64,000 bases of DNA from Ranitomeya imitator (Eukaryota). Both the position numbers and the translations under genes were made by a program. Under the pieces are notes generated by a model that ran no database searches, was not told the origin of the DNA, and worked only from the letters and a program-made list of their open reading frames with translations. Position 1 is the stretch's first letter. Every line of letters begins with the position of its first letter. The stretch spans positions 476,284,001 through 476,348,000 of the forward strand of contig NC_091282.1 in NCBI RefSeq assembly GCF_032444005.1, given 5' to 3'. Of this stretch, positions 5,200 to 44,312 are shown one piece after another.

Positions 5200-5886
5200 T
5201 GAGATGTGTGTATGAGCTGGTGTGTTTGTGTGTGATATCTATAGTGTGTGTGTGTGTGATATCTGTAGTGTGTGTGTGTGATATCTGTAGTGTGTGTGTG
5301 TCTGACATCTGTAGTGTGTGTGTGTGTGTGATATCTGTAGGGTGTGTGTGTGATATCTGTAGTGCGTGTGTTATATATGTAGTGTGTGTGTGAGATCTGT
5401 AGTGTGTGTGTGTGTGTGTGATATCTGTAGTGCGTGTGTTATATATGTAGTGTGTGTGACATCTGTAGTGTGTGTGTGATATCTGTAGTGTGTGTGATAT
5501 CTGTAGTGTGTGTGATATCTGTAGTGTGTATGTGTGTGTGATATCTGTAGTGTGTGTGTGTGTGATATCTGAAGTGTGTGTGTGTGTGATATCTGTAGTG
5601 TGTGTGTGATATCTGTAGGGTGGGTGTGTGATATCTGTAGTGCGTGTGTTATATATGTAGTGTGTGTGTGAGATCTGTAGTGTGTGTGTGTGTGTGTGTG
5701 ATATCTGTAGTGCGTGTGTTATATATGTAGTGTGTGTGACATCTGTAGTGTGTGTGTGATATCTGTAGTGTGTGTGATATCTGTAGTGTGTGTGATATCT
5801 GTAGTGTGTATGTGTGTGTGATATCTGTAGTGTGTGTGTGTGTGATATCTGAAGTGTGTGAGTGTGTGATATCTGTAGTGTGTGTG
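5200..5886. repeat. (TG)n-gatatctgta compound minisatellite
   Basis: Repeating gtgtgtgtgatatctgta units with variable TG runs. Source of spurious ORF 4916-6055. Confidence 0.9.
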
Positions 5887-7199: not shown

Positions 7200-7900
7200 A
7201 CACTATGAGGGGGGCTGCATTATATTCTATGGGGGTTACATTGTATTGTATGGCAGGGCTGCAGTATACTCTGTGGGGTGGCTGTATTATACTATATGTG
7301 GGCTGCATTATACTGAATCGAGGACTATGGGGAATATATTATACTATATGAAGAACTATGGTCCATTATACTATGGGAAGTGAATTGTACAACATGGATG
7401 ACGATGGCGGTGCATTATACTATATGGAGCACTATGAGGAGTGTATTATACTATATGGAGGACTGAGCAGTGTATTTTAATATATGGAGTACTATGTGGA
7501 GTGTATAATACTAAATGGAGGACTGAAGAGTGTATTATACTATATGGAGGACTATGAGGAGTGTATTATACTGTATGGAGGACTGAGCAGTGTAATTTAA
7601 TATATGGAGGACTATGTGGAGTGTATAATACTAAATGGAGGACTGAGGAGTGTATTATACTATATGGAGGACTATGAGGGGTGTATTATACTATATGGAG
7701 GACTGAGCAGTGTATTATACTATATGGAGCACTACGAAGAGTGTATTATGCTATATGGAGCACTATGAGGAGTGTATTTTAATATACGGAGGAGTGTATT
7801 ATACTATATGTAGGACTGAGGAGTGTACAATACTATATGGGGGACTATGGGGAGTGTATTATACTATAAGGAGTACTATGGGGGTGCATTATACTTCTCA
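7200..7900. repeat. ~30-bp minisatellite (gagtgtattatactatatggaggactatgag-like)
   Basis: Visible tandem units inside the hAT-like element. Confidence 0.8.
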
Positions 7901-10340
7901 TATGGATCCCCATGACTTCTATGTTAGCCCCTGATGAGTATAATGGTTTATTTTCTTTTATACATTACATAACAATGGCATTACGGGGGACAAATATATG
8001 CCAGGATGGGGCACTGGATAGTTATGCAACTGAGGTCACACTATACAACTTTGCAATAAAGCTATAGTGTGCAAAATTAATAGGGAAAATGTGAATTTGG
8101 GTGGAAAATATTTTGGCATGGTGGGGGGGCCCCATTTGAAAGTTTGCATCGGGGCCCATAACTTTGTAGTTACGCCACTGCATACAGGGTGATGTCCCCA
8201 GAGCCCTGCTATACACAGTATGTCCTCACAGCCCCCTATAGACAGTATGTTGTCTCCACAGTCCCTCTATATACAGTATAGCTTCACAACTCCCTTGTGA
8301 ACAGAACAACAGCCCCACAGCTCCTTATAAATAGTATAAGTCCACAGTTCCCTATATACCGTATGAAAGCACCACAGTCCCCTATGTACAGATTGATGGT
8401 CCCACAGCTCCCTACATAAATATGATTGCTCCAAAGCTCCCTATCTACAGTATGATGGACCCACAATTGCTGTGTGGCTCGTCTTCAGTCTGGTCGTTTT
8501 CTGGAGAGGCTCCTCAGTAGGTACAGGCAGCGTCAGGTGAGTTGCGTGACGTCATTCAGCAGATGCGGCTATGCACAGCATTTTGTGTGGCCGCACCTGC
8601 TAGGAGAGCTAGAAGCAGCCACAAACTTTCTACTACAAGTTCTCCTGACAAGTTATACTTGAAAGTCAAAGCAACAAAAAGATCTTGCTCCACCGAAACA
8701 ATAGAGAATACATTCAGCTGCACACAAAAAAATATATATTTCTAATTTTCAAAGAGAAAGACATGCATTGATCTGCACATTGCTTATACTGCGGCTTCTT
8801 TGATAACATTTATTGTTGCATGTTATTATTAGTGTCGCCTCATTTTTCTTTTTTTAATGCGGATATCGCTATATACACCTCTTTATAGCTCATAAAGGTT
8901 TTCCTGAAATGTTAACCTTATGGTATGCATTGATTGTTTTTCCACATTACCTTATGCACTTGCATTTCTTACAGCATCTACTGTTAGCCATTTTATTATT
9001 GGTGTTTGGCATCTATTTTCTTGTTCATCACGTCTCCATAAATACCTAATACTTTACGAGTACCTTCACGACCACAGCTAGCGCAGTTCTGAATGACCCA
9101 GATAGTCTGCATGCGCAGTATTGAAGTCTCGATGCATGCGTACTATTAATGATTGTGACGTGAGAGCATCCCCCAATTCTGGACACTGAGCAGCTTGGAT
9201 ATAGTATGTTCATGTACAATACGGCCCTGGCTAAATCCATACTCCTGGTAACTATAGTTTTTTGATGATCATACTATTTAAGGCACACATACCCCTGGTG
9301 TTTTTGTATTAATAAAAGTGTTATTTGAAAAACTTTCACCATTTTGTAAGAATTTCTTTGTCTTGGAGAATTATGTAGTTATGCTGTAAAGAGGCCGCTG
9401 TACTCTTACAAACAATATGGTGCCTTCAGAAGACAATTGGTGAAGGTGCCAAGAGTCACAACCAACTAGAGAGTGGTGGCTTATCCTAATGATAGGCTAT
9501 CAATAGTCTGATCTTGGAAACCCACTTTTTAATTACCTTTGACAGAAGAGATCAATGTAGGGACTTAAGTACCAATATAATGGCGATGAGTAAGGGTACC
9601 GTCACACAGTACAATTTTGATCGCTACGACGGCACGATTCGTGACGTTCGAGCGATATAGTTACGATATCGCAGTGTGTGACACGCTCCTGCGATCAGGG
9701 ACCCCGCTGTGAATCGTACGTCGTAGCACATCGTTTGAAACTTTCTTTCGTCGTCTAGTGTCCCGCTGTGGCGGCATGATCGCATGGTGTAACAAAGGTG
9801 TGCACGATATTGTATACGATGTAAAGGGCGGAGGAGCTGGCTACGTAGGAGCGCAAAATTCTCCACCTCCCGTGTGCTGATTGGGCGGTACAATACTGTG
9901 CGCTCATTCAACAGACAAAGGACTATTGTTCCAAGCGGATAAAACCGGAGCTGTCGAGCGCTCTATTCATTTCTCTCTGTAGCACGTGCTGGATACAGAA
10001 CTCCTAAATTCGCTGGATTCCCTGTACTTTTATAACTACTACAACTACAGACTTTTACCGCAAAAGGTATGCATAACGCTACAGCGTAGCAGATGTTGCG
10101 CTTCAACGGGGATAAACGCTGGAGCGTGGTCGATTGTTCCTTTATGGAGAGTAGGGTAGGCCAGAGAACCTCAGGTACACAGCTGTAGCGTGGCCCAATT
10201 AATTAATCCTTTTACAGATCGAGATGGTTGACTGCCCCATTTAATACCAGTAGTAACATATATAGTTATTAGATCAATGGTCAGAACATTGTTTTGTAAG
10301 CACGTGTATTTATTGTACATTTGTTTTATTTTTAGGAACT

Positions 10341-12083
10341 ATGCTCACTTCCGATGAGAGTTCTGTTGTTGCTGCTGCCCTGGTGTTTGAGGCAGCACGT
10401 CTCCAAGAAGAGAGACGTCCTAAACGAAAACGTCGCATGTGGACCCGGAGCTGGCTGCAGAAAAGATCCACATTGTCACACATGGGTCTCATAAGAGAGT
10501 TACATGACAATAACCCTCATGATTTCCGAAACTACCTTCGGATGTCCGAGGAATCCTTCAAAATAATACTGTCTGCTGTTACGCCACTCATACAAAGGCG
10601 TGATACGCCGATGCGTGCAGCCGTGCCCGTGGATGAAAGGTTGGCGGTGACACTGCGGTTCCTGGCAACAGGAAGGTCTCTTCAGGATTTGCAGTTTTCC
10701 GCAGCTGTTTCCAGACCTTTCCTGAGCGTTGTGATTCCGGAGACATGCGAGGCCATTGTGCACAGCTTAAGGCATTATATGGAGGTACTACTATATTATT
10801 TTGGCTGTTGTGTTATGTCGATATATTATACTAGCTATTTAACCCGTTCTACGCCCTGGTTGCGCGCATTTCTATTGGTATATGTTCTACATCCTATCAT
10901 GTGCTGCTCCCATCCTGCGCCCCCATTCTGACATGTGCTGCTGCGATCCTGCGCCATCCTGCGCCTCCATTCTGACATGTGCTGCTCCCATTTTGCGGCT
11001 CCATTCTGACATGTGCTGCTCCAATCCTGCGCCACCCTTCTTTTATTTGCTGCTCCCAACGTAATTTAATAGGTTATATTATTTTAATATATTGTTTTGC
11101 ACCCCCTCTCAGTCAGTGAAGCCGTCTGATAAAATGGCTGCCTGCATATTCTGGATTGTTGACTATAACTTTGTTATACTAATCAAAACTGTGCGTCAAT
11201 CACTCTAGGATGTCCACATGAGAGTGTATGTGCACAACAATATATTTGACCTAATTTGTACATGTTTCCTTCTCATCTTGCAGTTTCCCAAGACGGCGGA
11301 GGACTGGAAGAAGATTGCTTCCGATTTTGATCAGCTGTGGCAGTTTCCAAACTGCGGTGGTGCATTAGATGGAAAGCATGTGCGCATCACGCAACCAGCC
11401 AACTCTGGATCCTTTTTTTTCAACTACAAAGGATATTTCAGTGTGATCCTCATGGCCCTTGTCAATGCGAACTATGAGTTCGTCGATGTGGATGTTGGCA
11501 TGAATGGTCGAGTCTCCGACGGTGGAGTTTTTGAACACACTTCATTTGGGGAAAGCTTAAGGAACAATCAACTGCAGTTGCCAGTAAATGAAGACACAAA
11601 AGCAAACCTCAATTTTGTTTTCATCGCAGACGAAGCTTTCCCTCTTCATCCACATTTGCTGAAGCCATTTGCACAGAGAACACTCACACCGGAGCGCCGA
11701 ATCTATAATTACCGGTTGTCGAGGCCCGTCGTGTGGTTGAAAATGCCTTTGGGATTATGGCTAATCGGTTTAGAGTGTTCCACACAGCTATCAACTTGAA
11801 GCTGCCGTCTATAGACTTTGTGGTTTTGGCATGCTGTGTGCTCCATAATTTCCTGAGACATCATGATACGAGCTCCTATTCTCCTCCTTCGTTTATTGAT
11901 GCAGTGGACCCAAGAACCGGAGATATTGTGCCCGGGGAATGGCGTACACAACCTGATAATTTAACAGCTCTTCAAGCACTTGGATCTGGCAGACAGGCAG
12001 ACGATGCAAGGGACTGTCGAGAAAAATACTGTTAGTACTTTAATGGTTCTGGAGCTGTACCCTGGCAGGATCGCGCCGTATAA
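10341..12083 (+). pseudogene. Harbinger (HARBI1-like, DDE_Tnp_4) transposase, two coding exons, one frameshift and one late stop
   Basis: Exon 10341-10784 (GAG|GTACTA), intron 10785-11283 (ttccttctcatcttgcag), exon 11284-12083. Motifs: ERLAVTLRFLATG (HTH), GALDGKH, FIADEAFP, RVVENAFG. A 1-bp loss at ~11722-11725 (agg[g]cccgtcgt) and TAG at 12033-12035, 16 codons before the natural TAA. About 414 aa if repaired. Confidence 0.9.
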
Positions 12084-12538
12084 AAAAAATATTTCTTTTT
12101 GTTTTGCTGTTTACTCAACAATATGTATGTTATGCTTTCGTGTCCACAATGTAAATTTGCGAGTAGGTCACTGTCTTTTCTGTAATAAAATTAAATTGTA
12201 TTTATTTCTCCCGTTATTGTTGATTGTTCATTTTAGATACTACGTTATAGCGGTCGGTCTATATTGCATTCCAAAGTCAAATGTTGACTTCCTTCCATTC
12301 CAAGCTCTGCCATGCACACAAACAAAGGTGTACCCACACAGAATCGTATTTTCAATCATATAAACCTCTGTAAATGACTTAAAATGTGATGAGATGCCTA
12401 AAAAATAGTGTTGTAAACCCTTATAGCTCCATAAACATTAAATAATGAGAATTTTTGTTTTTTAGATAACAATTTCTTTATATGTAACAATCTAACTCCA
12501 AAATATAACATAACAAAAAAAACAATAAAAAAGAAAAA

Positions 12539-14235
12539 TTATCTTCTTCCACGGCCCAACAGGTGTCGCAGCATCACGCCCTGCTGCTCAACTTGAGCCT
12601 GGAGGAGCGCTGCTGTCTGCTGCAGGAGCGCTGCTGTACGCTCCAGGCGCAGTTGTCTGGCCAGGAGCTCTCTCACGGTGGGCGGTTCTGTGGATAGAAG
12701 AGGTTGGAGAACTGATGGTGATTCCGCTGAAAATACCTATCGACCTCTGTTGCTGGACCAAATTGAGTGTGTTGTAAATTTCTATTTGGTCCGGGCACAC
12801 AGGGCTTTTTTTTTTTTAAATTAAATTTTACAGTTTTTGTTGTCAATTGTGACATTCCACCGAGATATCCACTCGTATTATCTTAATACTTACGGAGAAG
12901 GGATGCCGGTTCTTCATTGCCAGAACCAGTACTGCTTATTTCCCATCCATGACATCTGGCCACTGCTGCTAAAAGGAAATAATAACAGATCTGTTTAACT
13001 ATGGAACACGCCGTTGCAAAGCGCTCGCTGTTTTTGTCACTTACGTATGGTAGCTTCTGGGGAGAAGGCCGCCGACCCGGGGGAGGAAAATGAGGGCCGG
13101 AAGGGAGGTGTTGAGGGTGGTGTTGGGGTGCGAGGCCGCATGGTCAATAAACATGTTGAGGTCCCGGGCTCTGGGCTGCCGCTGGTGGCGGATGAAGGAG
13201 AGCTTGTCTCAATGAGAGGTGCCTGTTGCCGGCGCCTTCTCTCTACACATAAATGAAACAAACAAAATGTTTAGACATTTCTATACTGTATGTTGTAAAC
13301 CAAGTGCAGAGCAAAGGGAATCATTTAAACCAATACGGTTCCTGCTTTAATTAGTCCTAAAATTCAAAGGGAATGAACGCTGTGTTCTGATCGTGTTTTG
13401 CAGCAGCATTTGGAGAAGTTGTAACAGAGAAGCTTGTCTTTTATATGTGTAGTACTGTGTGTGCTCCATATTGTGTGTTCCGTACGATGTGTACGTGGTA
13501 CTGTGTGTGGCACGGTGTGTACGTCGTTGTGTGTGCGGCGCTGTGTGTGCTCCGTATTATGTGCGACACGGTGTGTATGCCGCAGTACTAGAAGAGCATC
13601 ACGGCTGTGCGCGTCTACTGATTAGCTGCCATTATTTCTCCTCCGGGCACTGTGCGCGCAGGATAATGTATACAATATGTACGCTACACTGTTATGTCAC
13701 CTATGCTATAATTACATTTCTATGAGTGATGGTACACTTACGTGAGGTCCTGGGCTGTGGCCTGCTGCTGTTGGTGGATGAAGGAGAACTGGCAGCAATG
13801 GCAGGTCTGTGTTGCTGTCGCCTTCTCTCTACAGATAAATGAAAGAAAAGCAATGTTTTAAAAACAAAGAACAGGGATTCCAGAGCCCCCCCCCAAAAAA
13901 AAATAGCCCGCAGGCCTACCTCCTCATAAAAGCGTGCATCGCCCAATTCCCCCATACTGGTACTTGCCTCGCCTTGTCTCCGCACGCAACTCAGCAAGAA
14001 GGTGTGGATTTTTGTGTCGGAGGTCGGCCCATTTCTTACGCAACTGCTGCGCACTCCGGCGGACGCCAAACCTCCTATCCAGCATTTGGACAATGCGACG
14101 CAGCACCTCCTGCTTATGTTGGTTCGGGTGTGCTGGGAGAGTCTTCTGGCACTCATAATCAAGTGCATCCATGCGATGTACCAAAAACCGGAGCTCGGTG
14201 TGCCCCAAAGGGGCAGATCTCTGTCTTCCAGCCAT
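12539..14235 (-). CDS. Harbinger accessory gene 1: Myb/SANT-like DNA-binding + C-terminal coiled coil, 5 exons, 258 aa, apparently intact
   Basis: Exons 14235-13968 (GC donor GAG|GCAAGT), 13828-13742, 13242-13045, 12968-12894 and 12687-12539. All introns are phase 1 and the frame is open from MAGRQRS to LLGRGRR*. N-terminus contains ELRFLV...RSAQQLRKKWADLR; last exon reads VRELLARQLRLERTAALLQQTAALLQAQVEQQ. Confidence 0.8.
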
Positions 14236-14520
14236 TACAGATAAAAAGACGCTATAAAGCAGCACCTAACCACACCCAGAGGAAGTCCTTAACTGTGCAG
14301 TTCTCCCGCGCGATCCGCATCGCTATAGCGTTGCCGTTTATGGACAGCGTCACATTTGTGACGGCTGAGCGCTACAGAAGGAACGCACATAGTAAATGAC
14401 GTTCGAACGATGAAGATATAACGCCGGTGCGGCACGTAATGTGCGCTCGTGGTATATGACGGCGTGATGACGTTACAGCGTTCCTGCGCTACCTTGCTTT
14501 GCTTCCCTGACATCCTTAAA

Positions 14521-17500
14521 ATGGCTGCCAGGCGACGTGATCCTCCTATGGGTGTCCCAGAGCTAAAGTTCATGATTACCACTATGGATCAGATGCAGTA
14601 TGAAACCACAGGGCTGGTGCTGCACCGCAACCAGCACAAGGATGAAGTCGTACGTGTGGTGTCTGAGGGCCTCAGGAAGCAGTTTGGGATAACAAGAAGT
14701 AAGGCCCAGATTGTGAAGAAATGGGGAGATCTTAAATCAAAAAGCCCAGCGCGCCTGCAGGAGCTTCGCCGTGAGATCCGCAGTGGTGAGTACGCAGGTA
14801 CCCAAAAGTATTGCACGGCGAAGGGTTAATTGGGTGTGTATGTGGTGTGTATGTGGCCCTGCTATGGTGCAATAATGAAAGGAGCAGAGCACTATGTGGC
14901 CCTGCTATGGTGCAATAATGAATGGTGCAGAGCACTATGTGGCCCTGCTATGGTGCAAAAATGAACGGTGCAGAGCACTATGTGGCCCTGCTACGGTGCA
15001 ATAATGAATGGTGCCGAGCACTATGTGGCCCTGCTATGGTGCAATAATGAACGGTGCAGAGCAGTATGTGGCCCTGCTGTGGTGCAATAATGAATGGTGC
15101 CGAGCACTATGTGGCCCTGCTGTGTTGCAACAATGAAAGGTGCAGAGCACTATGTGGCCCTGCTATGGTGCAATAATGAATGGTGCAGAGCACTATGTGG
15201 CCCTGCTATGGTGCAACAATGAAAGGTGCAGAGCACTATGTGGCCCTGCTATGGTGCAATAATGAATGGTGCAGAGCACTATGTGGCCCTGCTATGGTGC
15301 AATAATGAAAGGTGCAGAGCACTATGTGGCCCTGCTGTGTTGCAACAATGAAAGGTGCAGAGCACTATGTGGCCCTGCTATGGTGCAATAATGAATGGTG
15401 CAGAGCACTATGTGGCCCTGCTGTGGTGCAATAATGAATGGTGCCGAGCACTATGTGGCCCTGCTGTGTTGCAACAATGAAAGGTGCAGAGCACTATGTG
15501 GCCCTGCTATGGTGCAATAATGAATGGTGCAGAGCACTATGTGGCCCTGCTATGGTGCAACAATGAAAGGTGCAGAGCACTATGTGGCCCTGCTATGGTG
15601 CAATAATGAATGGTGCAGAGCACTATGTGGCCCTGCTATGGTGCAATAATGAAAGGTGCAGAGCACTATGTGGCCCTGCTGTGTTGCAACAATGAAAGGT
15701 GCAGAGCACTATGTGGCCCTGCTATGGTGCAATAATGAATGGTGCAGAGCACTATGTGGCCCTGCTGTGGTGCAATAATGAATGGTGCAGAGCACTATGT
15801 GGCCCTGCTGTGTTGCAACAATGAAAGGTGCAGAGCACTATGTGGCCCTGCTATGGTGCAATAATGAATGGTGCAGAGCACTATGTGGCCCTGCTATGGT
15901 GCAACAATGAAAGGTGCAGAGCACTATGTGGCCCTGCTATGGTAAAATATCACTGTTGCCATATCTGCTGATCGAACGTTATTTTTTCCTTCACAGACGC
16001 AAAGACACACCGACGCCGCCACGAGGCATCCCACACCGCCTCAGATATCGCTGTGCCCTCCGGGTCAACGGCTCAACAACCCAGTAGGTTCACCCAATAA
16101 TGTGATTAGGATTTGTTGTAAGGTCCCCTCTACCCCCCCTCCACCTGCAGTCACTGTTGCCATTTATGTAAAAAAAATTTTTTTATTTTTTCCCCTCACA
16201 GAGGCAACGACACAGCGCTGCAGCCACGAGGCTTCCCACCCCGCCTCAGATGTCCGTGCGCCCTCTGGGTCAACGGCTCAACAACCCAGTAGGTTCACCC
16301 AATAATGTGATTAGGATTTGTTGTAAGGTCCCCTCTCCCCCCCCCCACCTGCAGTCACTGTTGCCATTTATGTAAAAAAAAATTTTTTTATGTAAAAAAT
16401 TTTTTTTTATTTTTTCCCTTCACAGAGGCAAAGACACAGCGCCGCCGTCGAGTTTACCAGGCCTTTGACACGGACTCTGATCCAGAGTTGCCCTCCGTGC
16501 CTACAGATCCTAGTAGGTTCCCACAATAATGTGATTAGGTTTTGGTGGCAGGTCCCCTCTTCCCCCCCCCCCCCACCTGCAGTGACTGTTGCCATTTATG
16601 TAAAAAAAATTTTTTTTTCCCTCACAGAGGCAACGACACAGCGCCGCAGCCACGAGGCTTCCCACCCCGCCTCACATGTCCGTGCGCCCTCTGGGTCAAC
16701 GGCTCAACAACCCAGTAGGTTCCCACAATAATGTGTTCCGGATTTGGTGGCAGGTCCCCTTCCCCCCCCCCACAACTGCAGTCACTGTTGGCATTTATGT
16801 TAAAAAAAAAAAAAATGTTTCCCTTCACAGAGGCAAAGACCAAGCGCCGCAGCCATGAGGCTTCCCACCCCGCCTCACATGTCCGTGCGCCCTCTGGGTC
16901 AACGGCTGAACAACCTAGTAGGTTCCCACAATAATGTGTTCAGGATTTGGTGGCAGGTCCCCTCTTCCCCCCCCCCCCCACAACTGCAGTCAATGTTGGC
17001 ATTTATGTTAAAAAAAAAAAATTTTTTCCCTTCACAGAGGCAAAGACACAGCGCCGCAGCCACGAGGCTTCCCACCCCGCCTCACATGTCCGTGCGCCCT
17101 CTGGGTCAACGGCTGAACAACCTAGTAGGTTCCCACAATAATGTGTTGAGGATTTGGTGGCAGGTCCCCTCTCCCCCCCCCCCCCACAACTGCAGTCACT
17201 GTTGGCATTTATGTAAAAAAAAAAAAAAAAAAAAAAAAAATTTCCCTTCACAGAGGCAAAGACAGCGCCGCAGCCACGAGGCTTCCCACCCCGCCTCACA
17301 TGTCCGTGCGCCCTCTGGGTCAACGGCTGAACAACCTAGTAGGTTCCCACAATAATGTGATTAGAAATTGGTGGCAGGTCCCCTCTTCCCCCCCCCCTCA
17401 ACTGCAGTCACTGTTGCCATTTATGTTAAATATTTTTTTGTTTTTTTCCCTTCACAGAGGCAAAGAAACAGCGCAGCCACCCCGAGGCATCCCAGTCACC

Positions 17501-17908
17501 GCAGTACTGGCCCCCTGATGCTCTTCCGGAGAATATGACCCCAGACGAGGTCTTGCCACGTAAGTTTTTCCAACTCGCTTAAGATTGTCACTCACTGCAT
17601 CTCTCTATGTAACCCTGTACATCAAGGGCCGTTTCAGAGCCTTCCGCCGCCTCAGATGTTTCATTCATCCTTTACGCTATTATGGGGAAGTGATCACAGC
17701 CCACTATCTGGATAATACTGTGGTATTAATGTTATGTTTTTATGCTTTCTCAACAACAGCAGCCGGCAGTGTGACCATCGTAGATGTTAAAGCCAGGATT
17801 GAAAGGCTGTGCGTGACTCTGGCGCAGATTCAGGAGCAGCAGAATCTGGCAATCGGAGAGTTGATTAAGATTAAAGACATGTGCCAACTGTTGGAGGCGG
17901 GACAATAA
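14521..17908 (+). CDS. Harbinger accessory gene 2: Myb/SANT-like + tandem 87-nt cassette exons + coiled coil
   Basis: Exon 1 is 14521-14785 (G|GTGAGT). Cassette exons are 15997-16083, 16202-16288, 16426-16512, 16628-16714, 16831-16917, 17038-17124 and 17254-17338 (85 nt, frameshifted). Then 17458-17559 and last exon 17760-17908. 345 aa if the 85-nt copy is skipped. Confidence 0.75.
14851..15943. repeat. 43-bp minisatellite, ~25 copies, in intron 1 of accessory gene 2
   Basis: Unit gcagagcactatgtggccctgctatggtgcaataatgaatggt. The variant pattern repeats at a 344-bp (8-unit) offset, e.g. 15121 vs 15465. Confidence 0.95.
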
Positions 17909-18157
17909 TACATATTAATACCGGGTTAAAAATTTTTTTGTTGTTACATTAAAAAAATTTAGTTAAACTATGATTCATTTTTTTTGTATTAGTTAAATGT
18001 ACATGACTTTGTTACGTTAATTTGTGCCCTCATACAGTGCTGTGATCGAGACACACCAATCAAACAGTCGTGATAGAATTTCAAAGAAAAGCTTTTATTT
18101 AACACATTATGTTAACAAGACAATAAAAAAAAAAGTAATGTAAAATAAGTTAGGAAA

Positions 18158-18402
18158 TCACAAATCGTGATACGCCGATTCTTCCGGCTGATAACTTGGG
18201 TGCCTGATGGGCGAAGCCATATGTGAAGGTATTGGCGTGTAGGAGTTAGGGGGTGGCTGGCCGAAGTGGGAAACGGGAACATTGTGTCGCATTGGTGTCT
18301 GACACTGTGACCAACCATTATAATATGAGGGCTCTGTCCGCTGCATTGGCCGGGAAGAGACCAAACGAGTGTGCTCGTCCAAATTGCCATCTGTACCCTT
18401 GT
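18158..18402 (-). pseudogene. Orphan 3' fragment of the MADF gene left by internal duplication
   Basis: Nine differences in ~250 nt versus 19978-20237. It reads ...EHTRLVSSRPMQRTEPSYY...EESAYHDL* and is cut at 18402, where sequence homologous to 14433 resumes. Confidence 0.85.
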
Positions 18403-18498
18403 CACGTAATGTACGCTCGTGGTCTATGACGGCGTGATGACGTTACAGCGTTCCGGCGTGCCTGCGCTAGCTTGCTTTGGTTCCCTGACATCTTGATA

Positions 18499-19763
18499 AT
18501 GGCTGCCAGTCGCCGTGATCCTCCTATGGGCATCCCAGAGCTCAAGTTCCTTATTGGAACAATGGATCGGATGCAGTACGAGACAACTGGGCTGGTGCTG
18601 CACCGCAACCAGCACAAGGATGAAGTTGTCCGTGTGGTGTCTGAGGGCCTCAGGAAGCGGTTTGGGATAACTCGCAGCAAGGCCCAGATTGTGAAAAAAT
18701 GGGGCGATCTCAAGTCCAAAAGCCCAGAGCGCCTGCAGGAGCTTCGCAAGGAGATTCGCAGAGGTCAGTACGCAGGTACCCAAAAGTATGTGGCACAGCT
18801 ATGGGGCAGTTTGAACGTTGCAGAGCCACTATGTGCCACAGCTATGGGGCAGTATAAACGTTGCAGAGCCACTATGTGCCACAGCTTGAACGTTGCAGAG
18901 CCACTATGTGGCACAGATATGGGACAGTTTGAACGTTGCAGAGCCACTATGTGCCACAGCTATGGGGCAGTATGAACGTTGCAGAGCCACTATGCGGCAC
19001 AGCTATGGGACAGTTTGAACGTTGCAGAGCCACTATGTGCCACAGCTATGGGACAGTATGAACGGTGAAAAGTACTATGTGGCACAGCTAACTGCAGACC
19101 TACCTTTTTTTTTTCCTTCACAGAGGCAAAGACACAGCACCACCGCCGCCACGAGGCATCCCGCACAGCCTCTTCTGGATCTGTGCCCTCTGGGTCAACT
19201 CCTCCAGATCCTAGTAGGTTCCCACAATTATGTGATTTGGATTCAGTTGCAGGTCCCCTCTTCCCCCCCCCTCCCCCGGCAGCCAGTGTTGCCATATATG
19301 CTAACAGACCTTTTTTTTTTTTTTTCCCTTCACAGAGGCAAAGAGACAGCGCCGCCGCCGACAGCACGAGGCATTCAACATGGACTCTGATCCCGAAGTG
19401 CCCTCCGTGCTTCAACATCCTAGTAGGTTCCCACAATAAAGTTATTTTGATTTTGTGGCAGGCCCACTCTTTCACCCCCAACCCAAACACCACCCCCCCC
19501 CCCAAGTCAGTATTGCCTTATATGCTGACTGTTTTTTTTTCTTTTTTCCTTCACAGAAGCAAAGACACATCGGGAGACTACAGAGTTATTAATGTTATGT
19601 TTTTTGACCCACAGCTGTCGTCAGTGTGAACAAGGAGGATCTTGAAGCCGGCATAGAAAGGCTTATCCACACTATGGCGCGGATTCAGGAGCAGCACAAT
19701 GTGGCAATGGAGGAGCTGCAGAAGCTTTGGGACATGTGCCAGCAGTTGGAGGCGGGCCAATAA
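18499..19763 (+). CDS. Harbinger accessory gene 3: paralog of gene 2, 4 exons, 196 aa
   Basis: Exons 18499-18763 (G|GTCAGT), 19124-19213, 19336-19422 and 19615-19763, all phase 1 and in frame. A vestigial cassette start lies at 19557. Confidence 0.75.
18786..19090. repeat. 43-bp minisatellite, ~7 copies, homologous to 14851-15943
   Basis: Unit gcagagccactatgtgccacagctatggggcagtatgaacgtt. It aligns to the gene-2 intron unit with compensating 1-bp indels. Confidence 0.85.
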
Positions 19764-19992
19764 TACATTTTTGGTTGTTACATTAAAAATATTTAGTTAA
19801 ACTATGATTCCATTTTTTTTGTATTAGTTAACTGTACATGAATTTGTTACGTTAATTTGTGCCCTCATACAGTGCTGTGATCGAGACACACCAATCAAAC
19901 AGTCGTGATAGAATTTCTAATAAAAGCTTTTATTTGAAACATTATTTTAACAAGACAATAAAATAAAAAGTAATGTAAAAGAAGTTAGGAAA

Positions 19993-20902
19993 TCACAAAT
20001 TGTGATACGACGATTCTTCCGGCTGATAACTTTGGTGCCTGATGGGCGAAGCCATATGTGAAGGTATTGGCGTGTAGGAGTTAGGGGGTGGCTGGACGAA
20101 GTGGGAAACGGGAACATTGTGTTGCATTGGTGTCTGACACTGTGACCAACCATTGTAATATGAGGGCTCTGTCCGCTGCATTGGCCGGGAATAGACCAAA
20201 CGAGTGTGCTTGTCCAAATCGCCATCTGTACCCTTGTTTACTGCTTCCAATATTAGACGCTCCGCTAGTGTTCTTTGGCTGTCGTCCATTTTGGCCAGTT
20301 TGTCAACAACATAGTGTCCAAACCCCTGCAACGCAGGGCTAACATTGTTTGTTAACACCTTTTTTGCAAGGCTCAACAGTTCATGTGAAACGTTTGAGGT
20401 GGCTTTCCGTTTCCTTGGACCTTGCCTCGATTGAGTCCTGGCAGGTGCCGCCTCCACTAAATCTGTTGTCGTGCAGTCCTGTGAACAGTCCAGTGTACTG
20501 TCCTGCGCACTGTCATCCTGGGGGAAAAAAAAAAAAAACAAGTTACGAACCTGGCAACAAAAAGTTTGACCACCATAACCGCATCCAAACTATATATTCG
20601 TAGTAGGTAAAAAAAGGTTGTAATATATTTTAAGCTTAGTAATATTCTTTAACCTTCCCATTTATTTAATACTTTTAACTACACTGTTCTGACTGCTAGG
20701 GGAACCTGATTAATATTTTATAGTCTAAATAGTCTCAACAAGAGTACATCGGCAGCTTGAAGCGATACTATTTTCTATAGTGGCACGGTGGCACGGTGGC
20801 GCAGTGGTTAGCACAGCAGCCTTGCAGCGCTGGAGTCCTGGGTTCAAACCCCACCAAGGACAACATCTGCAAAGAGTTTGTATGTTCTCTCCGTGTTTGC
20901 GT

Positions 20903-20933
<31 letters not shown>

Positions 20934-21694
20934 ACATTCCAAAGACATACTGATAGGGAATTTAGATTGTGAGCCCCATCGGGGACAGCAATGATAATGT
21001 GTGCAAAATGTAAAGCGCTGCGGAATATGTTAGCGCTATATAAAAATAAAGATTATTATTATATTGCTTAGATGGTATGGTTTAGAAATATCGCCATTTC
21101 ATACATATTATGTTCCCCATATAATACTTTACTGCGACAGGGTTACTTATGTGGACATGTTTTTGTAATAACTTCAAACTGATGTGATAATCAGAAGTAT
21201 AAAACATAAAATGCAGAGAAAAATTATGTAATTATAGGACACATTGGTGAACTTTCGTCCAAAGAGCTACTTACTTGTTGCCCTTGTGACTCCTGCTCGG
21301 CGTGGTTCTCCGAAACAATTTGTTCCACAGGTGCCAACAAGCGAAAACACGTGGAAGTCCGTGGCACCTCTTGGTCCCTCAGAAAATTCAGATGTTCAAA
21401 ATACCAAAGCTTTGGCACATAAACATCTTCGGTGGAAGCCCCGGACTTTGTAGTGTGAAGAACCTTGTTAAGCTCCTTCCTCCACACCGTGCGGAGCGCC
21501 TGAATTTTCTTTTTAATAACCGCTTTGTTTGCTGGCTCTTCTGGTGCATGACGATTGTAAAGCTCAATGAGCTTTAAATAACCCTCCTGCCTCTTTTCCC
21601 TGTTACAATACTCTGGAGATTTGATTTTCCAGAGGCAGGGAAAAGACTGGTATATTTCGATGAATTCCCTGATGAATTCCACACGATTTGACAT
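19993..21694 (-). CDS. Harbinger accessory gene 4: MADF-domain protein with BESS-like C-terminal motif, 2 coding exons, 314 aa
   Basis: Exon 21694-21275 (FIEIYQSFPCLWKIKSPEYCNREKRQEGY...KKKIQALRTVWRKEL...YVPKLWYFEHLNFL; CAA|GTAAGT) and exon 20517-19993 (after poly-T cccccag; FGHYVVDKLAKMDDSQRTLAERLILEAV). Phase 0, frame open. Confidence 0.85.
20782..21062 (+). mobile_element. tRNA-derived V-SINE in the MADF gene intron
   Basis: A box ggtggcgcagtggttagc, B box gggttcaaaccc, V-domain gagtttgtatgttctctccgtgtttgcgtgggtttcctccgggcactccggtttcctcccacattccaaagacat, and an (ATT)n tail. Confidence 0.85.
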
Positions 21695-21819
21695 CTGAAA
21701 AATAATTATAAAAAAAAAAAAAATTACACGGTTGACAAAGAGTCCTTTAAACAATACTTTTGCCAGTGTGCCAAACGCTTAACAACAACAGCCACACAAA
21801 GAGCTCATGCCTACCATCC

Positions 21820-22490
21820 ATTGTTCCATCTGCCACGCCATAGGCCACCATAACCCAAAACAGTGTACCGCCTGCTTCACTACAGCAGCCACACAAATCG
21901 CTCATGGTGACCATACATTGTACCATCTGCCACGCTGTAGCTCACCAGACACAACCAGTCACAACAGCGTACCATCCGCATCGCTTCAGCGGCGGAACGA
22001 AGCGGTCATGCCGACCAAACAGCGTTCCATCTACCACGCTCTAGCCCACCAGTCACAACCAGTCACAACAGCGTACCATCCACATCGCTTCAGCGGCGGA
22101 ACGAAGCGGTCATGCCGACCAAACAGCGTTCCATCTACCACGCTCTAGCCCACCAGTCACAACCAGTCACAACAGCGTAACATCCGCATCGCTTGTTTCA
22201 TCTGCCACACCATAGGCCACCATAACCCAGAACAGTGTACCGCCCGCTTCCATACAGCAGCCACACAAAGCGCTCATGGTGACCATACATTGTACCATCT
22301 GCCATGCTGTAGCTCACCAGACACAACCAGTCACAACAGCGTACCATCCGCATCGCTTCAGCGGCGGAACGAAGCGGTCATGCAGACCAAACAGCGTTCC
22401 ATCTACCACGCTCTAGCCCACCAGTCACAACCAGTCACAACAGCGTACCATCCGCATCGCTTCAGCGACGGAACGAAGCGCTCATGACGA
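21820..22490. repeat. Nested direct repeats in the right subterminal region of the Harbinger element
   Basis: A ~370-bp duplication (21821 vs ~22194) containing ~100-bp units cagcgtaccatccgcatcgcttcagcggcggaacgaagcgg...cagtcacaaccagtcacaa. Confidence 0.85.
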
Positions 22491-25000
22491 CAGTACATCG
22501 TTCCATCCACTATGCCCAAGCGGTGTAACATACCTCGAAGCTGCGGTGCAAAGCGTGGAATATTCTGTGAAATACTGAATCCGATGTCCTAGTCCAACAA
22601 GTGTCCAAGTACAAAGTGAAGAAAGGAAATTTTGAAACCGGTGAGGTGGCTTGGAAACAATAGCGCTCAGGTGACAAATTTTCCAACCAATTGTGTGCAC
22701 AGAACCTGTGGCCTATCAGCACATAGCTAGCAGCTCGACACGCCCCCTAGTGAACAACGTCACGCACAGATTATGCAAAATTTGCTCTGAATCGTCTTGT
22801 GTGACACGACCGTACGACTGTCCCATACGACTTCTACATCGCAAATATGTCATGAAATTATCGCTCCAGCGCCGTACATCGTGAAGTGTGACCGCAGTGG
22901 AGCGATAATTAAGCGACGATGTAACGTCACAAATCGTGCCGTCGTAGCGATCAAAATTGCACTGTGTGACGGTACCCTAAGTAAGAAACAAGTCAGATGT
23001 TCTACTAGTCTGTGGACCTGTTACCACAGCTAGATGGTGGATATCTTCAGGAGAAATCAGTGGGCAAGTTGACCGACTGCCAGCACATAAGTATAATCTA
23101 TACTAATACTTTCCACTAATACAACTCTAAATGGCTTCATTCCAAGATGGGGCACATCTGAATGCAGGCATGCTGACTATGGCCATAATGTCCACGTCAC
23201 TTTCCCAAAGAATTATATAAAAGCTAGAATACCTCAGCATTTGGCAGACATGCCGTTACTGTAACACCTCAGCATGCGATTATCTGTCCCTCCCTTTGTA
23301 TTACAGCTCGTTCCTGAAATGCTCTGCTTCCTCTAGCCCCAGTGAGGAACTATCCCTGCCTTGCCCACTCCTTTTCCTGATATACACCCAACTGGTGATC
23401 AATCTCATCTTACCTCACAGCATCCACGCCTAGCAGGCATCTTGCCAATTCAACCCGTCTCTTGACTTTTTGCTGAACACACATTATGGCAGGGCCGAGC
23501 TTCACACATGTAAAAAGGCAAAAAGATTTAATTCACTATACTACAAATGCTTTATGCCTGGAAATCTACACTCACAAGGGCACTTCAATCTCTGCTGATC
23601 CACTGCAGTGAGCTCACACCCGGAGCATATAGCAGTATTGTAGACGAACCTCTGCAGCATTTTAGTCTTTGGGGCCTATCATCAAGACTGGCATAGCGTA
23701 CGTTCATACTATGCGAGTCTTCCCAGCATGCAAGGCACTGAATTCATTAAGAGGAACATGCTCATCTTCTTGGTGGCCTGCATTGCACCAGAAATGGCTA
23801 CTCCAGGCAGGGATTGCAGAAGCATTTCTGGCATCCATAACGTCAGCATTATTGATGAATTTGAAGAGCGGTTGTGTCCACGCCCTTGTCCCGCCATGGT
23901 TCCACCAATTTTAGCTGATTCCAACACTAAGTCGCAAAATTTTTGTGCAACACACCAAAAATGTTGCGACCTTTTACAGATTGATAACTTAGCCCCTATG
24001 TTTCATGGATGGATAAAAAATGTTACTAGAAAATCTTGCAATAGTTTTTTTTCCGTCAGTTTATTAAAATATTAATTCAGTTATTGTTGACTAATGACAA
24101 TACCATTAGTAACCAAATTGATTAAATCTAGAATTCACTATTCATTGATAAAATGTATCCTATATTACTCTCTTGCTACACTTCCATTTCAGGAGTCTGT
24201 AAAACCTAAGTGAAAACTCTGTGATATTGATATATTGAACCAGTGGAGAGCTTGTACTAACTCAAGGTATGGCTCAGTGACTAGCACTAGGGTCCTGGGT
24301 TTAAATCCCACCAAGAACATCATCTGCAAGTAGTGTGCATCACGCGTTGCAACCTTTTATCAATTTTTTTCCATTGAGATTAGCTAGTGTCAAGGGTTGT
24401 AAACTTCTTGATTAGAATGTGCACCCATTGACAAAGGAACATCAAGTTCTCTGGAGATGGACATGTAACCCTGAGATTGTTGATATTTTTCAACAATTTT
24501 AGTCCTCAGACAGTTCCCTTTTCCGCTTAAGGTTCTCCCTGGTTAGTGTGGCACACACAGACACAATATGCAAACATTGAGTCAACTTCCCCTCTTTCTA
24601 TCGGTTTTCAGGTTTGATTTTCATATTGCTCAGACCTGTTACTTGCCATAGATGAGATTGGAGATTGAATGAGCATCACATGCTTAAAACAAAGTTGGGA
24701 AATGTGCCAATAACTTTGTCCTGGTCCATTTTGGGTTTTTTGTGTGAAATGATGTCCAATTTGCCCTTTTTTTAAATTTTTTTAATTTTATTTTTTTACA
24801 ATCTGTGTATAACAAAACATGTGTGATTGCAATCATCTTCTGGGAGAAATACTTCCTTTTCTGGCACAATTTCAAGGGCGACAACACTTTCGGCCATAAC
24901 TGAATTATTCAAAATTCACAGTTTCAAAACTTTTATGCCATTTACCACACTCCTTTTTAACCACCAGACCCCTGACAGAGACATCTAGAATAAGAGCAGA

Positions 25001-32349: not shown

Positions 32350-32922
32350 GTAATTCCAATGAGCACAATGCACCATGACAATGCCGTAAGTGATAGAGAA
32401 GACAGAAAGCCTGACATTATTTTGGATTATAATGCCACAAAGGGAGCAGTTGATACTTTAGACCAAGCAATATCGACATATACATGCAAACGCAAAACCA
32501 ATCGGTGGCCAATGATATTATTTTATAACATACTGGACATTTCTGCTTACAATGCATTTGTCTTATGGAGAGAAATCGACCCCGATTGGAACCGGAATAA
32601 GCTGCATAAAAGAAGATTATTTCTTGAGGAATTGGGCAAATCCCTGGTTAGGCCATATATTGAGAGCAGAAAAGTGACCCCCAGAAGTGAAGGAGCAACA
32701 GCCATTGTAAAAAGTGTCCAGCATGCTCAAGAAAGAGACTCCACATCCACGGCCTCCACCAGCACAGCTACCAGCAGCACAGCTACCAGCAAAAAAAGGA
32801 AGAGATGTAGCTTCTGTCCATCTTCCTGTGACAATAAGACTAATCTGACATGTGCTGGATGTTCAAAATATCTGTGTAAAGGACATGTGTCTTATTATTG
32901 TGTTCAGTGTAAAAACGCATGA
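32350..32922 (+). pseudogene. Intact 3' exon of a piggyBac (PGBD4-like) transposase with Cys-rich C-terminal domain
   Basis: Acceptor tcttttcttttccaaacag|gta att cca atg. Reads DYNATKGAVDTLDQ, RKTNRWP...FYNILD and ends CSFC...CAGCSKYLCKGH...CVQC. Confidence 0.85.
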
Positions 32923-34620: not shown

Positions 34621-34853
34621 GGTTATTCATTATGCTTACATAGCGCTATCATATTCCGCAGCACTTTAAATACATCATCATCATTGTCCTCATCGGGGCT
34701 CACAATCTAAATTCCCTATTACTATGTCTTTGGAATGTAGGAGGAAACCAGTGTAGCCTGTGGAAACCCACGCACACACGGGGAGAACGTACAAGTTCCT
34801 TGAAGATGTAGCTATTGGTGGGATTTGAACCCAGGACCCCACTTAGCCACCGT
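34621..34853 (-). mobile_element. V-SINE copy
   Basis: Reverse complement of the 20782-21062 family (ggggctcacaatctaaattccctat, ggaggaaacc, gggatttgaacccaggac). Confidence 0.75.
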
Positions 34854-44225: not shown

Positions 44226-44312
44226 CATGGTGGCTCAGTGGTAAGCACTACAGTGCTGGGGTCCTGGGTTCAAATCCCACCAAGGACAACATCTGCAAGG
44301 AGCTTGTATGTT
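44226..44312 (+). mobile_element. 5' fragment of V-SINE
   Basis: ggtggctcagtggtaagcac...gggttcaaatcccaccaaggacaacatctgcaaggagcttgtatgttct, fused directly to a Tc1 TIR interior. Confidence 0.75.

What the first reader, a model, noticed from the sequence alone, without database searches (positions are those of the whole stretch)
9594..22977. Giant five-gene PIF/Harbinger transposon with an expanded accessory DNA-binding protein set
Established: autonomous PIF/Harbinger elements normally encode two proteins, a DDE transposase and one Myb/SANT-like partner. Seen: between intact 55-bp TIRs and a TAA TSD lie a transposase (+), a 5-exon Myb/SANT + coiled-coil gene (-), two more paralogs (+,+) and an unrelated 2-exon MADF/BESS-like gene (-). 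The four accessory genes have canonical splice phases and open frames. Even before the internal duplication the element had three accessory genes from two DNA-binding families. Inference: a multi-subunit transpososome, or element-encoded regulators (targeting, self-repression, anti-silencing). Whether this is undescribed cannot be established without a search.
Basis: partly seen in the sequence, partly recalled or inferred. Interest (0 to 1): 0.9.

Follow-up and report, generated by a model that had tools for sequence, protein, structure and literature searches.

The report
Frog Harbinger transposon with extra Myb genes
This is a real 13.4-kb PIF/Harbinger DNA transposon copy in the poison frog Ranitomeya imitator; besides the usual transposase and MADF partner it carries three copies of a second Myb-type DNA-binding gene, which is unusual for this two-gene superfamily, but its transposase is broken and the role of the extra genes is unproven.

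Summary
The anatomy is largely confirmed. Terminal inverted repeats (TIRs) of 55 bp match at 53/55 positions and are flanked by TAA on both sides. They enclose a DDE_Tnp_4 transposase, a two-exon MADF gene and three Myb/SANT-plus-C-terminal-helix genes (A on the minus strand, B and C on the plus strand).

The window is Ranitomeya imitator. RefSeq models for the transposase (229 aa, truncated), MybB (334 aa) and MADF (314 aa) coincide with my models.

- The transposase is dead here, with a 1-bp frameshift before the catalytic E and a premature TAG.
- MADF is not an unrelated extra. It is the cognate partner: a 3.1-kb butterfly relative has only transposase plus MADF.
- The Myb genes are the true extras.
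- BESS is not supported by Pfam.
- MybA intron 1 uses a GC donor, and one MybB cassette exon is frameshifted.

The extra gene looks like a family trait. MADF lies upstream of an A-type Myb gene on the same strand in R. variabilis, and a second R. imitator locus has a chimeric MADF-Myb model. The Myb head evolved under purifying selection (dN/dS 0.14).

No other copy's DNA could be fetched and Repbase/Dfam were not searchable. I rate this a new variant of a known kind, of moderate interest.

The parts
9591..9593 (.). left target-site duplication, TAA
   Evidence...GAGTAA|GGGTACC on the left and GGTACCC|TAAGTAAG on the right
9594..9648 (+). left terminal inverted repeat, 55 bp
   Evidence: matches the right end at 53/55 positions; the tip GGGTACCGTCACAC resembles the tip of the butterfly relative
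10341..10784 (+). transposase exon 1 (N-terminal HTH-type region), donor GAG|GTACTA
   Evidence: the RefSeq 229-aa model uses the same intron (arithmetic)
11284..12035 (+). transposase exon 2 (DDE_Tnp_4 core); 1-bp frameshift at 11724/11725 and premature TAG at 12033-12035; the conserved tail continues out of reach to 12083
12539..14235 (-). MybA gene: exons 14235-13968 (GC donor), 13828-13742 (87-nt duplicated cassette), 13242-13045, 12968-12894, 12687-12539; 258 aa; not annotated by RefSeq
   Evidence: model; Myb_DNA-bind_5 at 24.2 bits against a 21.7 cut-off; same exon layout in RefSeq homologues P0172, P0173, P0175
14236..14520 (.). 285-bp spacer between the divergent MybA and MybB start codons (candidate bidirectional promoter, inferred)
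   Evidence: coordinates
14521..17908 (+). MybB gene: exon 1 14521-14785; 87-nt phase-1 cassette exons at 15997, 16202, 16426, 16628, 16831, 17038; a broken 85-nt cassette at 17254-17338; a 102-nt exon 17458-17559; last exon 17760-17908
   Evidence: RefSeq P0178 (334 aa) is 100% identical on the first and last exons and uses five cassettes
14850..15943 (.). 43-bp satellite, 25 copies, in MybB intron 1
15979..17494 (+). 207-bp tandem array, each unit being one intron plus one cassette exon
18161..18402 (-). duplicated fragment of the 3' end of MADF exon 2; end of the first duplication unit (junction 18402|18403)
18499..19763 (+). MybC gene: exons 18499-18763, 19124-19213, 19336-19422, 19615-19763; 196 aa; open; not annotated by RefSeq
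   Evidence: exon 1 is 96% identical to R. variabilis P0018
19993..21694 (-). MADF partner gene: exons 21694-21275 and 20517-19993; 314 aa; the intron holds an interspersed repeat at 20792-21055
21764..22507 (.). 104-bp tandem repeats in the right subterminal region
22923..22977 (-). right terminal inverted repeat
22978..22980 (.). right target-site duplication, TAA

Best explanation
Window 9594-22977 is one 13,384-bp copy of a PIF/Harbinger cut-and-paste transposon in Ranitomeya imitator.

Its core is the ordinary two-gene module of the superfamily: a DDE_Tnp_4 transposase plus a MADF-domain partner. By analogy with Harbinger3_DR, that partner binds subterminal sites and brings the transposase into the nucleus.

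Between these two genes the frog family has acquired a second kind of DNA-binding gene. It has three parts:
- a three-helix Myb/SANT head of Zeste/NAIF1/trihelix type;
- a disordered, basic, Ser/Pro-rich middle built from 87-nt phase-1 cassette exons;
- a C-terminal helix of about 40 residues, suited to dimerisation.

That gene then multiplied inside the element. MybA and MybB/C lie head to head. Cassette exons were duplicated in tandem together with their intron. A 3.97-kb tandem duplication (14433-18402 | 18403-20237) produced B and C and copied the last 240 bp of MADF.

In this copy the transposase is dead, so it could move only with transposase supplied in trans. The accessory reading frames are still open.

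Shown: the anatomy, the homologies, recurrence of the MADF-Myb linkage, and purifying selection on the Myb head.

Inferred: the Myb/helix proteins are dimeric DNA binders acting on the element itself. They could be a second end-binding or end-bridging adaptor next to MADF, or a regulator of its activity.
For: - TIRs and flanking TAA.
- DDE_Tnp_4.
- Closest transposases are from dendrobatid frogs (93% and 85% in R. imitator).
- The window is the RefSeq locus. P0178 equals MybB, and the neighbouring 229-aa DDE_Tnp_4 and 314-aa MADF genes map to window 10611-11799 and 19993-21694.
- MADF is the cognate partner. The butterfly element L002:36559-39642 (3,084 bp) has a transposase 57% identical, a MADF 46% identical, a similar TIR tip, and no Myb A/B/C-like sequence.
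- The extra gene recurs. In R. variabilis the A-type Myb P0172 has a 309-aa MADF gene 3.07 kb upstream on the same strand. R. imitator P0177, on another chromosome, fuses a MADF C-terminal piece to A-type Myb exons. At least 8 Myb-family models exist across the two species.
- Selection: for MybB vs MybC exon 1, dN 0.067, dS 0.47, omega 0.14, binomial P about 1e-6.
- Fold: AF2 models of P0178 and P0172 give a three-helix head at pLDDT above 90, a disordered middle and a 40-residue terminal helix. The best compact Foldseek matches are the Zeste DNA-binding domain and the GT-1 trihelix.
- MybA passes the Myb_DNA-bind_5 threshold.
- GTCACAC occurs 5 times in the two 300-bp ends, against 0.21 expected.
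- Literature: PIF elements have two genes (PMC9710019, PMC4482050, PMC13668399).
Against: - No DNA of any other frog copy could be fetched. No second TIR-bounded copy with the full layout was seen and no empty site was checked.
- At three other loci (MADF P0001 and P0003, Myb P0018) no neighbouring gene is annotated within 10 kb.
- The R. variabilis MADF-Myb locus shows no annotated transposase.
- MybA and MybC have no RefSeq model, so their expression and splicing are unsupported.
- MybA intron 1 has a GC donor, and one MybB cassette is frameshifted.
- The tails and cassettes evolve almost neutrally (omega 0.67-0.72).
- Foldseek E-values are not significant.
- The function of the Myb proteins is entirely inferred.
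- Repbase and Dfam could not be searched.
Confidence: 0.6

Rival explanations
1. The Myb genes are passengers from a second Harbinger lineage. They would be the ORF1-type partner of a different, vertebrate-type Harbinger family that became nested in, or recombined into, a MADF-type element. They would serve that other family, or nothing, and play no part in this element's transposition.
For: - Myb_DNA-bind_5/NAIF1-type proteins are the usual partners of vertebrate Harbingers (PMC9392472), and MybA passes that Pfam threshold.
- The butterfly relative lacks them.
- No Myb homologue turned up in Anomaloglossus, although MADF and transposase homologues did.
- Heads and tails look shuffled among copies.
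- The duplication is mosaic, as if a diverged copy had been recombined in.
Against: - No inner TIR pair or inner TWA duplication brackets the Myb cluster.
- The MADF-Myb linkage recurs in two species.
- No second transposase type was found next to any Myb gene.
- Origin from another lineage would not by itself exclude a present role.
Confidence: 0.22
2. Host gene capture or domestication. The Myb/helix gene would be a frog host gene, or a domesticated MADF-Myb pair, picked up by the transposon as in Pack-type gene capture. The selection seen on it would reflect host function, not transposon function.
For: - Introns are retained.
- RefSeq names the models as ordinary cellular proteins.
- The R. 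variabilis MADF-Myb pair sits near a GPCR gene with no annotated transposase.
- The Myb head is under purifying selection.
Against: - The family was found only as a multi-copy, structurally variable set in Ranitomeya: 8 models, truncated or chimeric in several. No single conserved orthologue appeared in other frogs.
- Here the genes lie inside TIRs.
- The search method is word-based and would miss distant host relatives.
Confidence: 0.1
3. Not one element. The two TIRs would belong to two separate, partly deleted insertions, and the genes between them would not form a mobile unit. The matching TAA would be chance, since every Harbinger insertion is flanked by TAA or TTA.
For: - A TWA duplication matches by chance about half the time.
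- The size of 13.4 kb is several times that of typical Harbingers.
- No empty site was available.
Against: - The transposase at the left and its cognate MADF at the right are the two halves of one module in the butterfly relative.
- There are exactly two TIR copies in 64 kb, in inverted orientation.
- About 3.8 kb of tandem repeats plus the ~4-kb internal duplication account for much of the extra length over the 3.1-kb relative; the extra Myb genes take up most of the rest.
Confidence: 0.05

Closest known systems
Insect PIF/Harbinger elements with a MADF partner (Drosophila PIF, PMC9710019; here the Aricia agestis copy L002:36559-39642)
   Same: DDE_Tnp_4 transposase with one intron (57% identical). 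A MADF partner with a conserved C-terminal helix motif (46% identical in the MADF domain; C-terminal alignment E 5e-4). A TIR tip of the form GGGTNCC..CACAC. A 3-bp TWA-type flank.
   Different: The insect copy is 3.1 kb with two genes only, and its MADF last exon sits inside the transposase intron. The frog element is 13.4 kb and adds three Myb/helix genes, satellites and an internal duplication.
Harbinger3_DR of zebrafish (Sinzelle et al. 2008, as summarised in PMC9710019 and PMC9392472)
   Same: A two-component logic: a transposase plus a Myb/SANT/trihelix protein that binds subterminal motifs, binds the transposase and imports it into the nucleus. TWA target duplication.
   Different: Harbinger3_DR has one partner gene. 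Here two sequence-unrelated classes of partner-like genes sit in one element (hhalign probability 0.1%), four accessory genes in all. No activity has been shown here.
Harbinger-1M_cIno of Caenorhabditis inopinata (PMC13668399)
   Same: Copies keep the DNA-binding partner gene while the transposase is lost or broken, and depend on a transposase supplied in trans.
   Different: The nematode derivatives carry MADF only. Here the transposase is present but dead, and a second DNA-binding gene family is added.
NAIF1 / MSANTD / Zeste-type Myb_DNA-bind_5 proteins
   Same: The MybA head passes the Pfam Myb_DNA-bind_5 cut-off. The predicted three-helix head superposes best on the Zeste DNA-binding domain and the GT-1 trihelix.
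   Different: The frog proteins add repeated cassette exons and a C-terminal helix. They are multi-copy and lie inside a transposon. MybB and MybC do not reach Pfam thresholds.
Multi-protein DNA transposons of other superfamilies (CACTA TnpA/TnpD, MuDR MURA/MURB); from my own knowledge, not tested here
   Same: Division of labour between a catalytic protein and separate DNA-binding or regulatory proteins encoded by the same element.
   Different: A different transposase superfamily, with no sequence relationship.

Membership tests
PIF/Harbinger superfamily | Transposase of the DDE_Tnp_4 / Plant_tran type | tested here: met
   Pfam DDE_Tnp_4 at E 4.3e-18 and 2.2e-6 on the two frame pieces; 13,511 homologues, with named ones annotated HARBI1-like or DDE Tnp4
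PIF/Harbinger superfamily | 3-bp TWA target-site duplication | tested here: met
   TAA on both flanks. Weak on its own, since TWA is the obligatory target.
PIF/Harbinger superfamily | Terminal inverted repeats | tested here: met
   55 bp, 53/55 identical; unique in the window
PIF/Harbinger superfamily | Second gene encoding a Myb/SANT/MADF DNA-binding protein | tested here: met
   MADF at 59.6 bits against a 22 cut-off; the same pairing occurs in the butterfly relative
Autonomous (potentially active) PIF/Harbinger element | Both the transposase and partner ORFs intact (the criterion of PMC4482050) | tested here: not met
   Frameshift at 11724/11725 before the catalytic E, and TAG at 12033-12035; RefSeq calls a truncated 229-aa product. 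An assembly error at the GGCCC run cannot be excluded for the frameshift.
MADF domain proteins | Pfam MADF_DNA_bdg above the gathering score | tested here: met
   59.6 bits, full-length match 1-84/84
MADF-BESS proteins | BESS motif detectable C-terminal to MADF | tested here: not met
   No BESS hit for exon 2 or for homologue P0010 at E up to 10. There is only a conserved helix motif shared with the butterfly protein that looks BESS-like by eye.
Myb_DNA-bind_5 (NAIF1/Zeste-type Myb/SANT-like) | Pfam PF13873 above the gathering score | tested here: met
   MybA exon 1: 24.2 bits against 21.7
Myb_DNA-bind_5 (NAIF1/Zeste-type Myb/SANT-like) | The same for MybB and MybC | tested here: inconclusive
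   Only Myb_DNA-bind_4 at 17 bits against 27. However, they are 46-47% identical to the MybA head (tblastn 1e-24), and the AF2 head superposes on the Zeste DNA-binding domain (probability 0.8, TM 0.62, E 0.6).
Coiled-coil dimerising proteins | Long amphipathic C-terminal helix forming a coiled coil | tested here: inconclusive
   AF2 gives a single helix of 39-40 residues at pLDDT 82-94 in both types. Oligomerisation was not modelled.
Family-level multi-gene layout (as opposed to single-locus capture) | Other copies carry MADF and Myb genes together | tested here: met
   R. variabilis locus of P0172; R. imitator chimeric model P0177. Gene lists only, with no DNA and no TIRs seen.
Family-level multi-gene layout (as opposed to single-locus capture) | Another TIR-bounded copy with transposase, MADF and Myb genes | not testable with these tools
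   Frog assemblies are listed without DNA ('file too large'). A TIR scan of metagenome contigs found nothing.

The most novel reading that the evidence does not exclude
A PIF/Harbinger lineage that has gone from two to three components. Besides the transposase and its MADF adaptor it would use a second, dimeric Zeste/NAIF1-type Myb protein, present in diverged paralogues, as an obligatory end-bridging factor or as an element-encoded repressor or anti-silencing factor. This would be the first Harbinger with a functional third protein class.
Probability: 0.2. Interest if true: 0.7.

Novelty: new variant of a known kind. Interest (0 to 1): 0.45.

Why it matters
PIF/Harbinger is the textbook case of a DNA transposon that needs exactly two proteins. 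Its partner proteins have repeatedly been domesticated together with the transposase (HARBI1/NAIF1, ALP1/ALP2, HDP1/HDP2).

A lineage that carries both known classes of partner-like proteins in one element would give a natural system for two questions: what each class contributes (nuclear import, end recognition, synapsis, regulation), and how new DNA-binding modules are recruited by transposons. One of these classes is here amplified and diversified by exon and gene duplication.

It is also a practical warning for annotation. RefSeq names these transposon genes as cellular proteins ('serine/arginine repetitive matrix protein 2-like', 'histone H3.v1-like').

If the Myb genes are mere passengers, the finding reduces to an oversized, decayed Harbinger copy.

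Tried and rejected
- Fetching other copies. 
- A TIR scan of metagenome contigs gave 0 hits. A shorter pattern would only give chance hits, so it was not run.
- The Logan contig L001 holds a distant MADF only and was not informative.
- A search for nested-element signatures found no inner inverted repeat bracketing the Myb cluster or the MADF gene, and no interspersed-repeat copies in the intergenic or subterminal parts.
- Shared subterminal k-mers of 9 nt or more were sought: none. Only the 7-mer GTCACAC is enriched.
- A profile comparison of Myb heads against MADF found no detectable similarity, so 'two families' stands at sequence level.
- A PDB sequence search with the Myb head profile returned only noise.
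- My first reading of the tandem exons as 91 nt with a TAG|GT donor was rejected, because it breaks the frame. The donor A|GTAGGT gives 87-nt phase-1 exons and matches RefSeq.
- I considered whether transposase homologues in other frogs are fused to MADF or Myb domains. None of 150 representatives is.
- Literature searches for Harbingers with a third gene found nothing relevant. Absence from this library is not proof.
Full report
**1. The observation**

The region holds one outstanding inverted repeat, 9593-9648 against 22923-22978 (56 nt, 96% complementary). The 30-nt tip occurs exactly twice in the 64-kb window, in inverted orientation, with none expected from shuffles. Aligned from the tips inward, the two ends are identical at 53 of the first 55 positions and then diverge. 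Both flanks read TAA directly outside GGGTACC.../...GGTACCC. A TAA/TAA match is what PIF/Harbinger makes, but it is weak evidence alone, because the target is always TWA. The window has no N runs.

**2. The organism and an independent annotation**

The MADF exon finds Ranitomeya imitator and R. variabilis proteins at 79-89% identity. The transposase finds R. imitator proteins at 93% and 85%.

One RefSeq protein, P0178 ('serine/arginine repetitive matrix protein 2-like', 334 aa), is 100% identical to my first and last exons of MybB. Its locus on the 1.25-Gb R. imitator chromosome lists three genes. With an offset of 4,466 they fall on:
- window 10611-11799, a DDE_Tnp_4 product of 229 aa;
- window 14467-17908, MybB;
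- window 19993-21694, a MADF product of 314 aa.

The window is therefore this locus. The lengths of the RefSeq products reproduce my transposase intron (10784/11284), my MybB exon set and my MADF model exactly. MybA and MybC have no RefSeq model.

**3. The genes**

*Transposase (+).*
- Exon 1 is 10341-10784 and exon 2 is 11284-12035.
- The DDE_Tnp_4 match is split between two frames at profile positions 116/119.
- The sequence reads ...YNYRLSR in one frame and ARRVVENAFG... in the next, which is a 1-bp loss at 11724/11725 just before the catalytic E.
- A TAG at 12033-12035 cuts off a tail (YFNGSGAVPWQ...) that intact relatives such as the Dendrobates tinctorius protein keep.
- As assembled, this transposase is dead.

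*MADF (-).*
- Two exons (21694-21275 and 20517-19993), a GT-AG intron in phase 0, 314 aa, MADF E 3.8e-16.
- The exon junction is the same as in RefSeq homologues P0001 and P0003.
- No BESS hit at E up to 10.
- The C-terminal helix motif is nevertheless conserved with the butterfly protein.

*MybA (-).*
- Five exons, 258 aa, open. The 4-exon version (229 aa) is also open.
- Intron 1 has a GC donor (G|GCAAGT). The others are GTAAGT. All introns are phase 1.
- The second exon (87 nt) is a tandem duplicate of the start of the third.
- RefSeq homologues show both the 4-exon form (P0172, P0018) and the form with two cassettes (P0173, P0175, P0177).
- The head passes the Myb_DNA-bind_5 cut-off (24.2 against 21.7 bits).

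*MybB (+).*
- Exon 1, then eight units of a 207-bp tandem array, then a last exon encoding a helix.
- Each array unit has a polypyrimidine tract, CAG, an 87-nt phase-1 exon and a GTAGGT donor.
- The seventh of the eight array units (17254-17338) is 85 nt and breaks the frame.
- The last array unit is 102 nt with a strong donor.
- Without the 85-nt unit the gene is open (345 aa).
- RefSeq uses five cassettes.

*MybC (+).* Four exons, 196 aa, open.

B and C heads are 46-47% identical to the A head but reach no Pfam threshold.

AlphaFold models of P0178 (which is MybB) and of P0172 (A-type, 69% identical to MybA) give the same architecture:
- a three-helix head at pLDDT above 90, with an extension helix;
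- a long disordered middle;
- a terminal helix of 39-40 residues.

The only compact structural matches are the Zeste DNA-binding domain (TM 0.62-0.66) and the GT-1 trihelix. Their E-values are not significant.

The Myb heads and the MADF domain are unrelated at profile level (BLASTP nothing).

**4. Internal architecture**

The element is 13,384 bp. About 3.8 kb is tandem repeat:
- 43-bp satellites in intron 1 of B and of C;
- the 207-bp exon-intron array;
- 104-bp repeats near the right end.

A tandem duplication has its junction at 18402|18403. Unit 1 (14433-18402) corresponds to 18403-20237, so it copied the Myb gene and the last ~240 bp of MADF exon 2, leaving a MADF fragment at 18161-18402.

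The duplication is mosaic. Both outer parts are about 96% identical, while the Myb gene body is only 72-88% identical.
- Between B and C, exon 1 has dN 0.067, dS 0.47 and omega 0.14, far fewer replacement changes than neutrality predicts (P about 1e-6).
- The cassette and the last exon are near neutral (omega 0.67 and 0.72).

So the two heads diverged for a long time under constraint. The duplication is either old with converted flanks, or one gene was replaced from a diverged copy. I could not decide between these.

An interspersed repeat sits in the MADF intron. No inner TIR pair marks a nested element.

**5. Which gene is the 'extra'?**

The literature states that all known PIF elements carry two genes, the second being a Myb-like/SANT/trihelix/MADF protein (PMC9710019; 214 families surveyed in PMC4482050; PMC13668399).

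A butterfly transposase (Aricia agestis, P0026) is 59% identical to the frog one, and its locus could be read as DNA. L002:36559-39642 is a 3,084-bp element with about 30-bp imperfect TIRs whose tip (GGGTCCCACACAC) resembles the frog tip. It holds:
- a transposase 57% identical to the frog one;
- a MADF gene 46% identical on the opposite strand;
- nothing resembling MybA, B or C.

The MADF gene is therefore the cognate partner of this transposase lineage, and the Myb/helix genes are the additions.

**6. Is the layout a family trait?**

Only gene lists, not DNA, were available for frog assemblies.

For:
- In R. variabilis the complete A-type gene P0172 has a 309-aa MADF gene 3.07 kb upstream on the same strand. 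That is the same order and orientation as MADF...MybA in the window, where the gap is 5.76 kb including the 3.98-kb duplication.
- In R. imitator, on another chromosome, model P0177 begins with the MADF C-terminal motif and continues with A-type Myb exons within 5 kb.
- Eight Myb-family models exist in the two species.

Against:
- The MADF loci of P0001 and P0003 and the Myb locus of P0018 show no annotated neighbour within 10 kb.
- No transposase is annotated at the R. variabilis pair.

The MADF-Myb linkage is thus recurrent. A second complete, TIR-bounded, five-gene copy has not been shown.

**7. How it most likely works**

Shown:
- It is a Harbinger copy with a dead transposase and open accessory frames.
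- Its cognate partner is MADF.
- It carries an extra Myb/helix gene family whose DNA-binding head was kept by selection.

Inferred from Harbinger3_DR and rice Ping/Pong as summarised in PMC9710019: MADF binds subterminal sites and brings the transposase into the nucleus. Candidate sites are the GTCACAC copies, which occur 5 times in the two 300-bp ends against 0.21 expected.

Inferred from architecture: the Myb proteins are dimeric DNA binders that act on the element, either as a second end-binding or bridging layer or as a regulator. I give the anatomical statement about 0.9 and the functional one about 0.3.

Rivals:
- passenger genes from a second Harbinger lineage (0.22);
- host-gene capture or domestication (0.10);
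- two unrelated half-elements (0.05).

**8. Novelty**

No paper in the held library describes a Harbinger with a third protein class. Repbase and Dfam could not be searched.

I classify this as a new variant of a known kind. The interest is moderate. It is a departure from a firm two-gene rule and recurs in two species, but it was seen here in a decayed copy and without functional evidence.

Noticed in passing
window 14433-20237: The internal tandem duplication is mosaic. Its outer parts are about 96% identical, but the Myb gene body is only 72-88% identical, with dS 0.47 in exon 1. This suggests gene conversion of the flanks, or replacement of one Myb gene by a diverged copy.
   Followed up: partly
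window 15979-17494: A 207-bp tandem array in which every unit is an intron plus an 87-nt phase-1 cassette exon (eight units, one frameshifted). A single extra cassette of the same kind exists in MybA (13828-13742). This is exon amplification by satellite-like tandem duplication.
   Followed up: yes
window 14850-15943 and 18787-19090: A 43-bp satellite in intron 1 of MybB (25 copies, 93% matches) and of MybC (7 copies, with a diverged consensus).
   Followed up: no
window 20792-21055: An interspersed repeat inside the MADF intron, with copies at 34624-34841 and 44226-44314 (80-82% identical). Its read-through ORF (20725-20937) looks like a SINE-type repeat.
   Followed up: partly
window 21764-22507: 104-bp tandem repeats fill the right subterminal region. 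No counterpart exists at the left end.
   Followed up: no
window 27984-29012: An apparently open Tc1/Sleeping-Beauty-like transposase ORF (342 aa; HTH_SB, HTH_Tnp_Tc3_2, DDE_3). Further Tc1-like pieces lie at 54507-54872, 44646-44912, 3381-3737 and 48689-48936.
   Followed up: no
window 32359-32922: A piggyBac-like (DDE_Tnp_1_7) C-terminal fragment.
   Followed up: no
L002 36559-39642 (Aricia agestis): In the compact butterfly relative, the last exon of the MADF gene (37870-37316, minus strand) lies inside the transposase intron (37203-37917). The two genes are therefore interleaved on opposite strands.
   Followed up: partly
proteins P0026 and P0023 vs window 11218-11799: Butterfly and beetle transposases (59% and 48% identical) rank among the frog hits, and the TIR tips are alike. 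This could be an old shared lineage or horizontal transfer between insects and frogs.
   Followed up: no
R. variabilis P0018; R. imitator P0177: Gene models elsewhere combine a C-type head with an A-type tail (P0018), or a MADF C-terminus with A-type Myb exons (P0177). Either modules are shuffled among copies or the models are chimeric. RefSeq names for family members ('histone H3.v1-like', 'SRRM2-like') are misleading.
   Followed up: partly
window 38892-39949, 7370-7895, 50470-50874, 5227-5886: Further satellites outside the element, with units of 23 bp x45, 31/60 bp, 34 bp and 18-20 bp.
   Followed up: no
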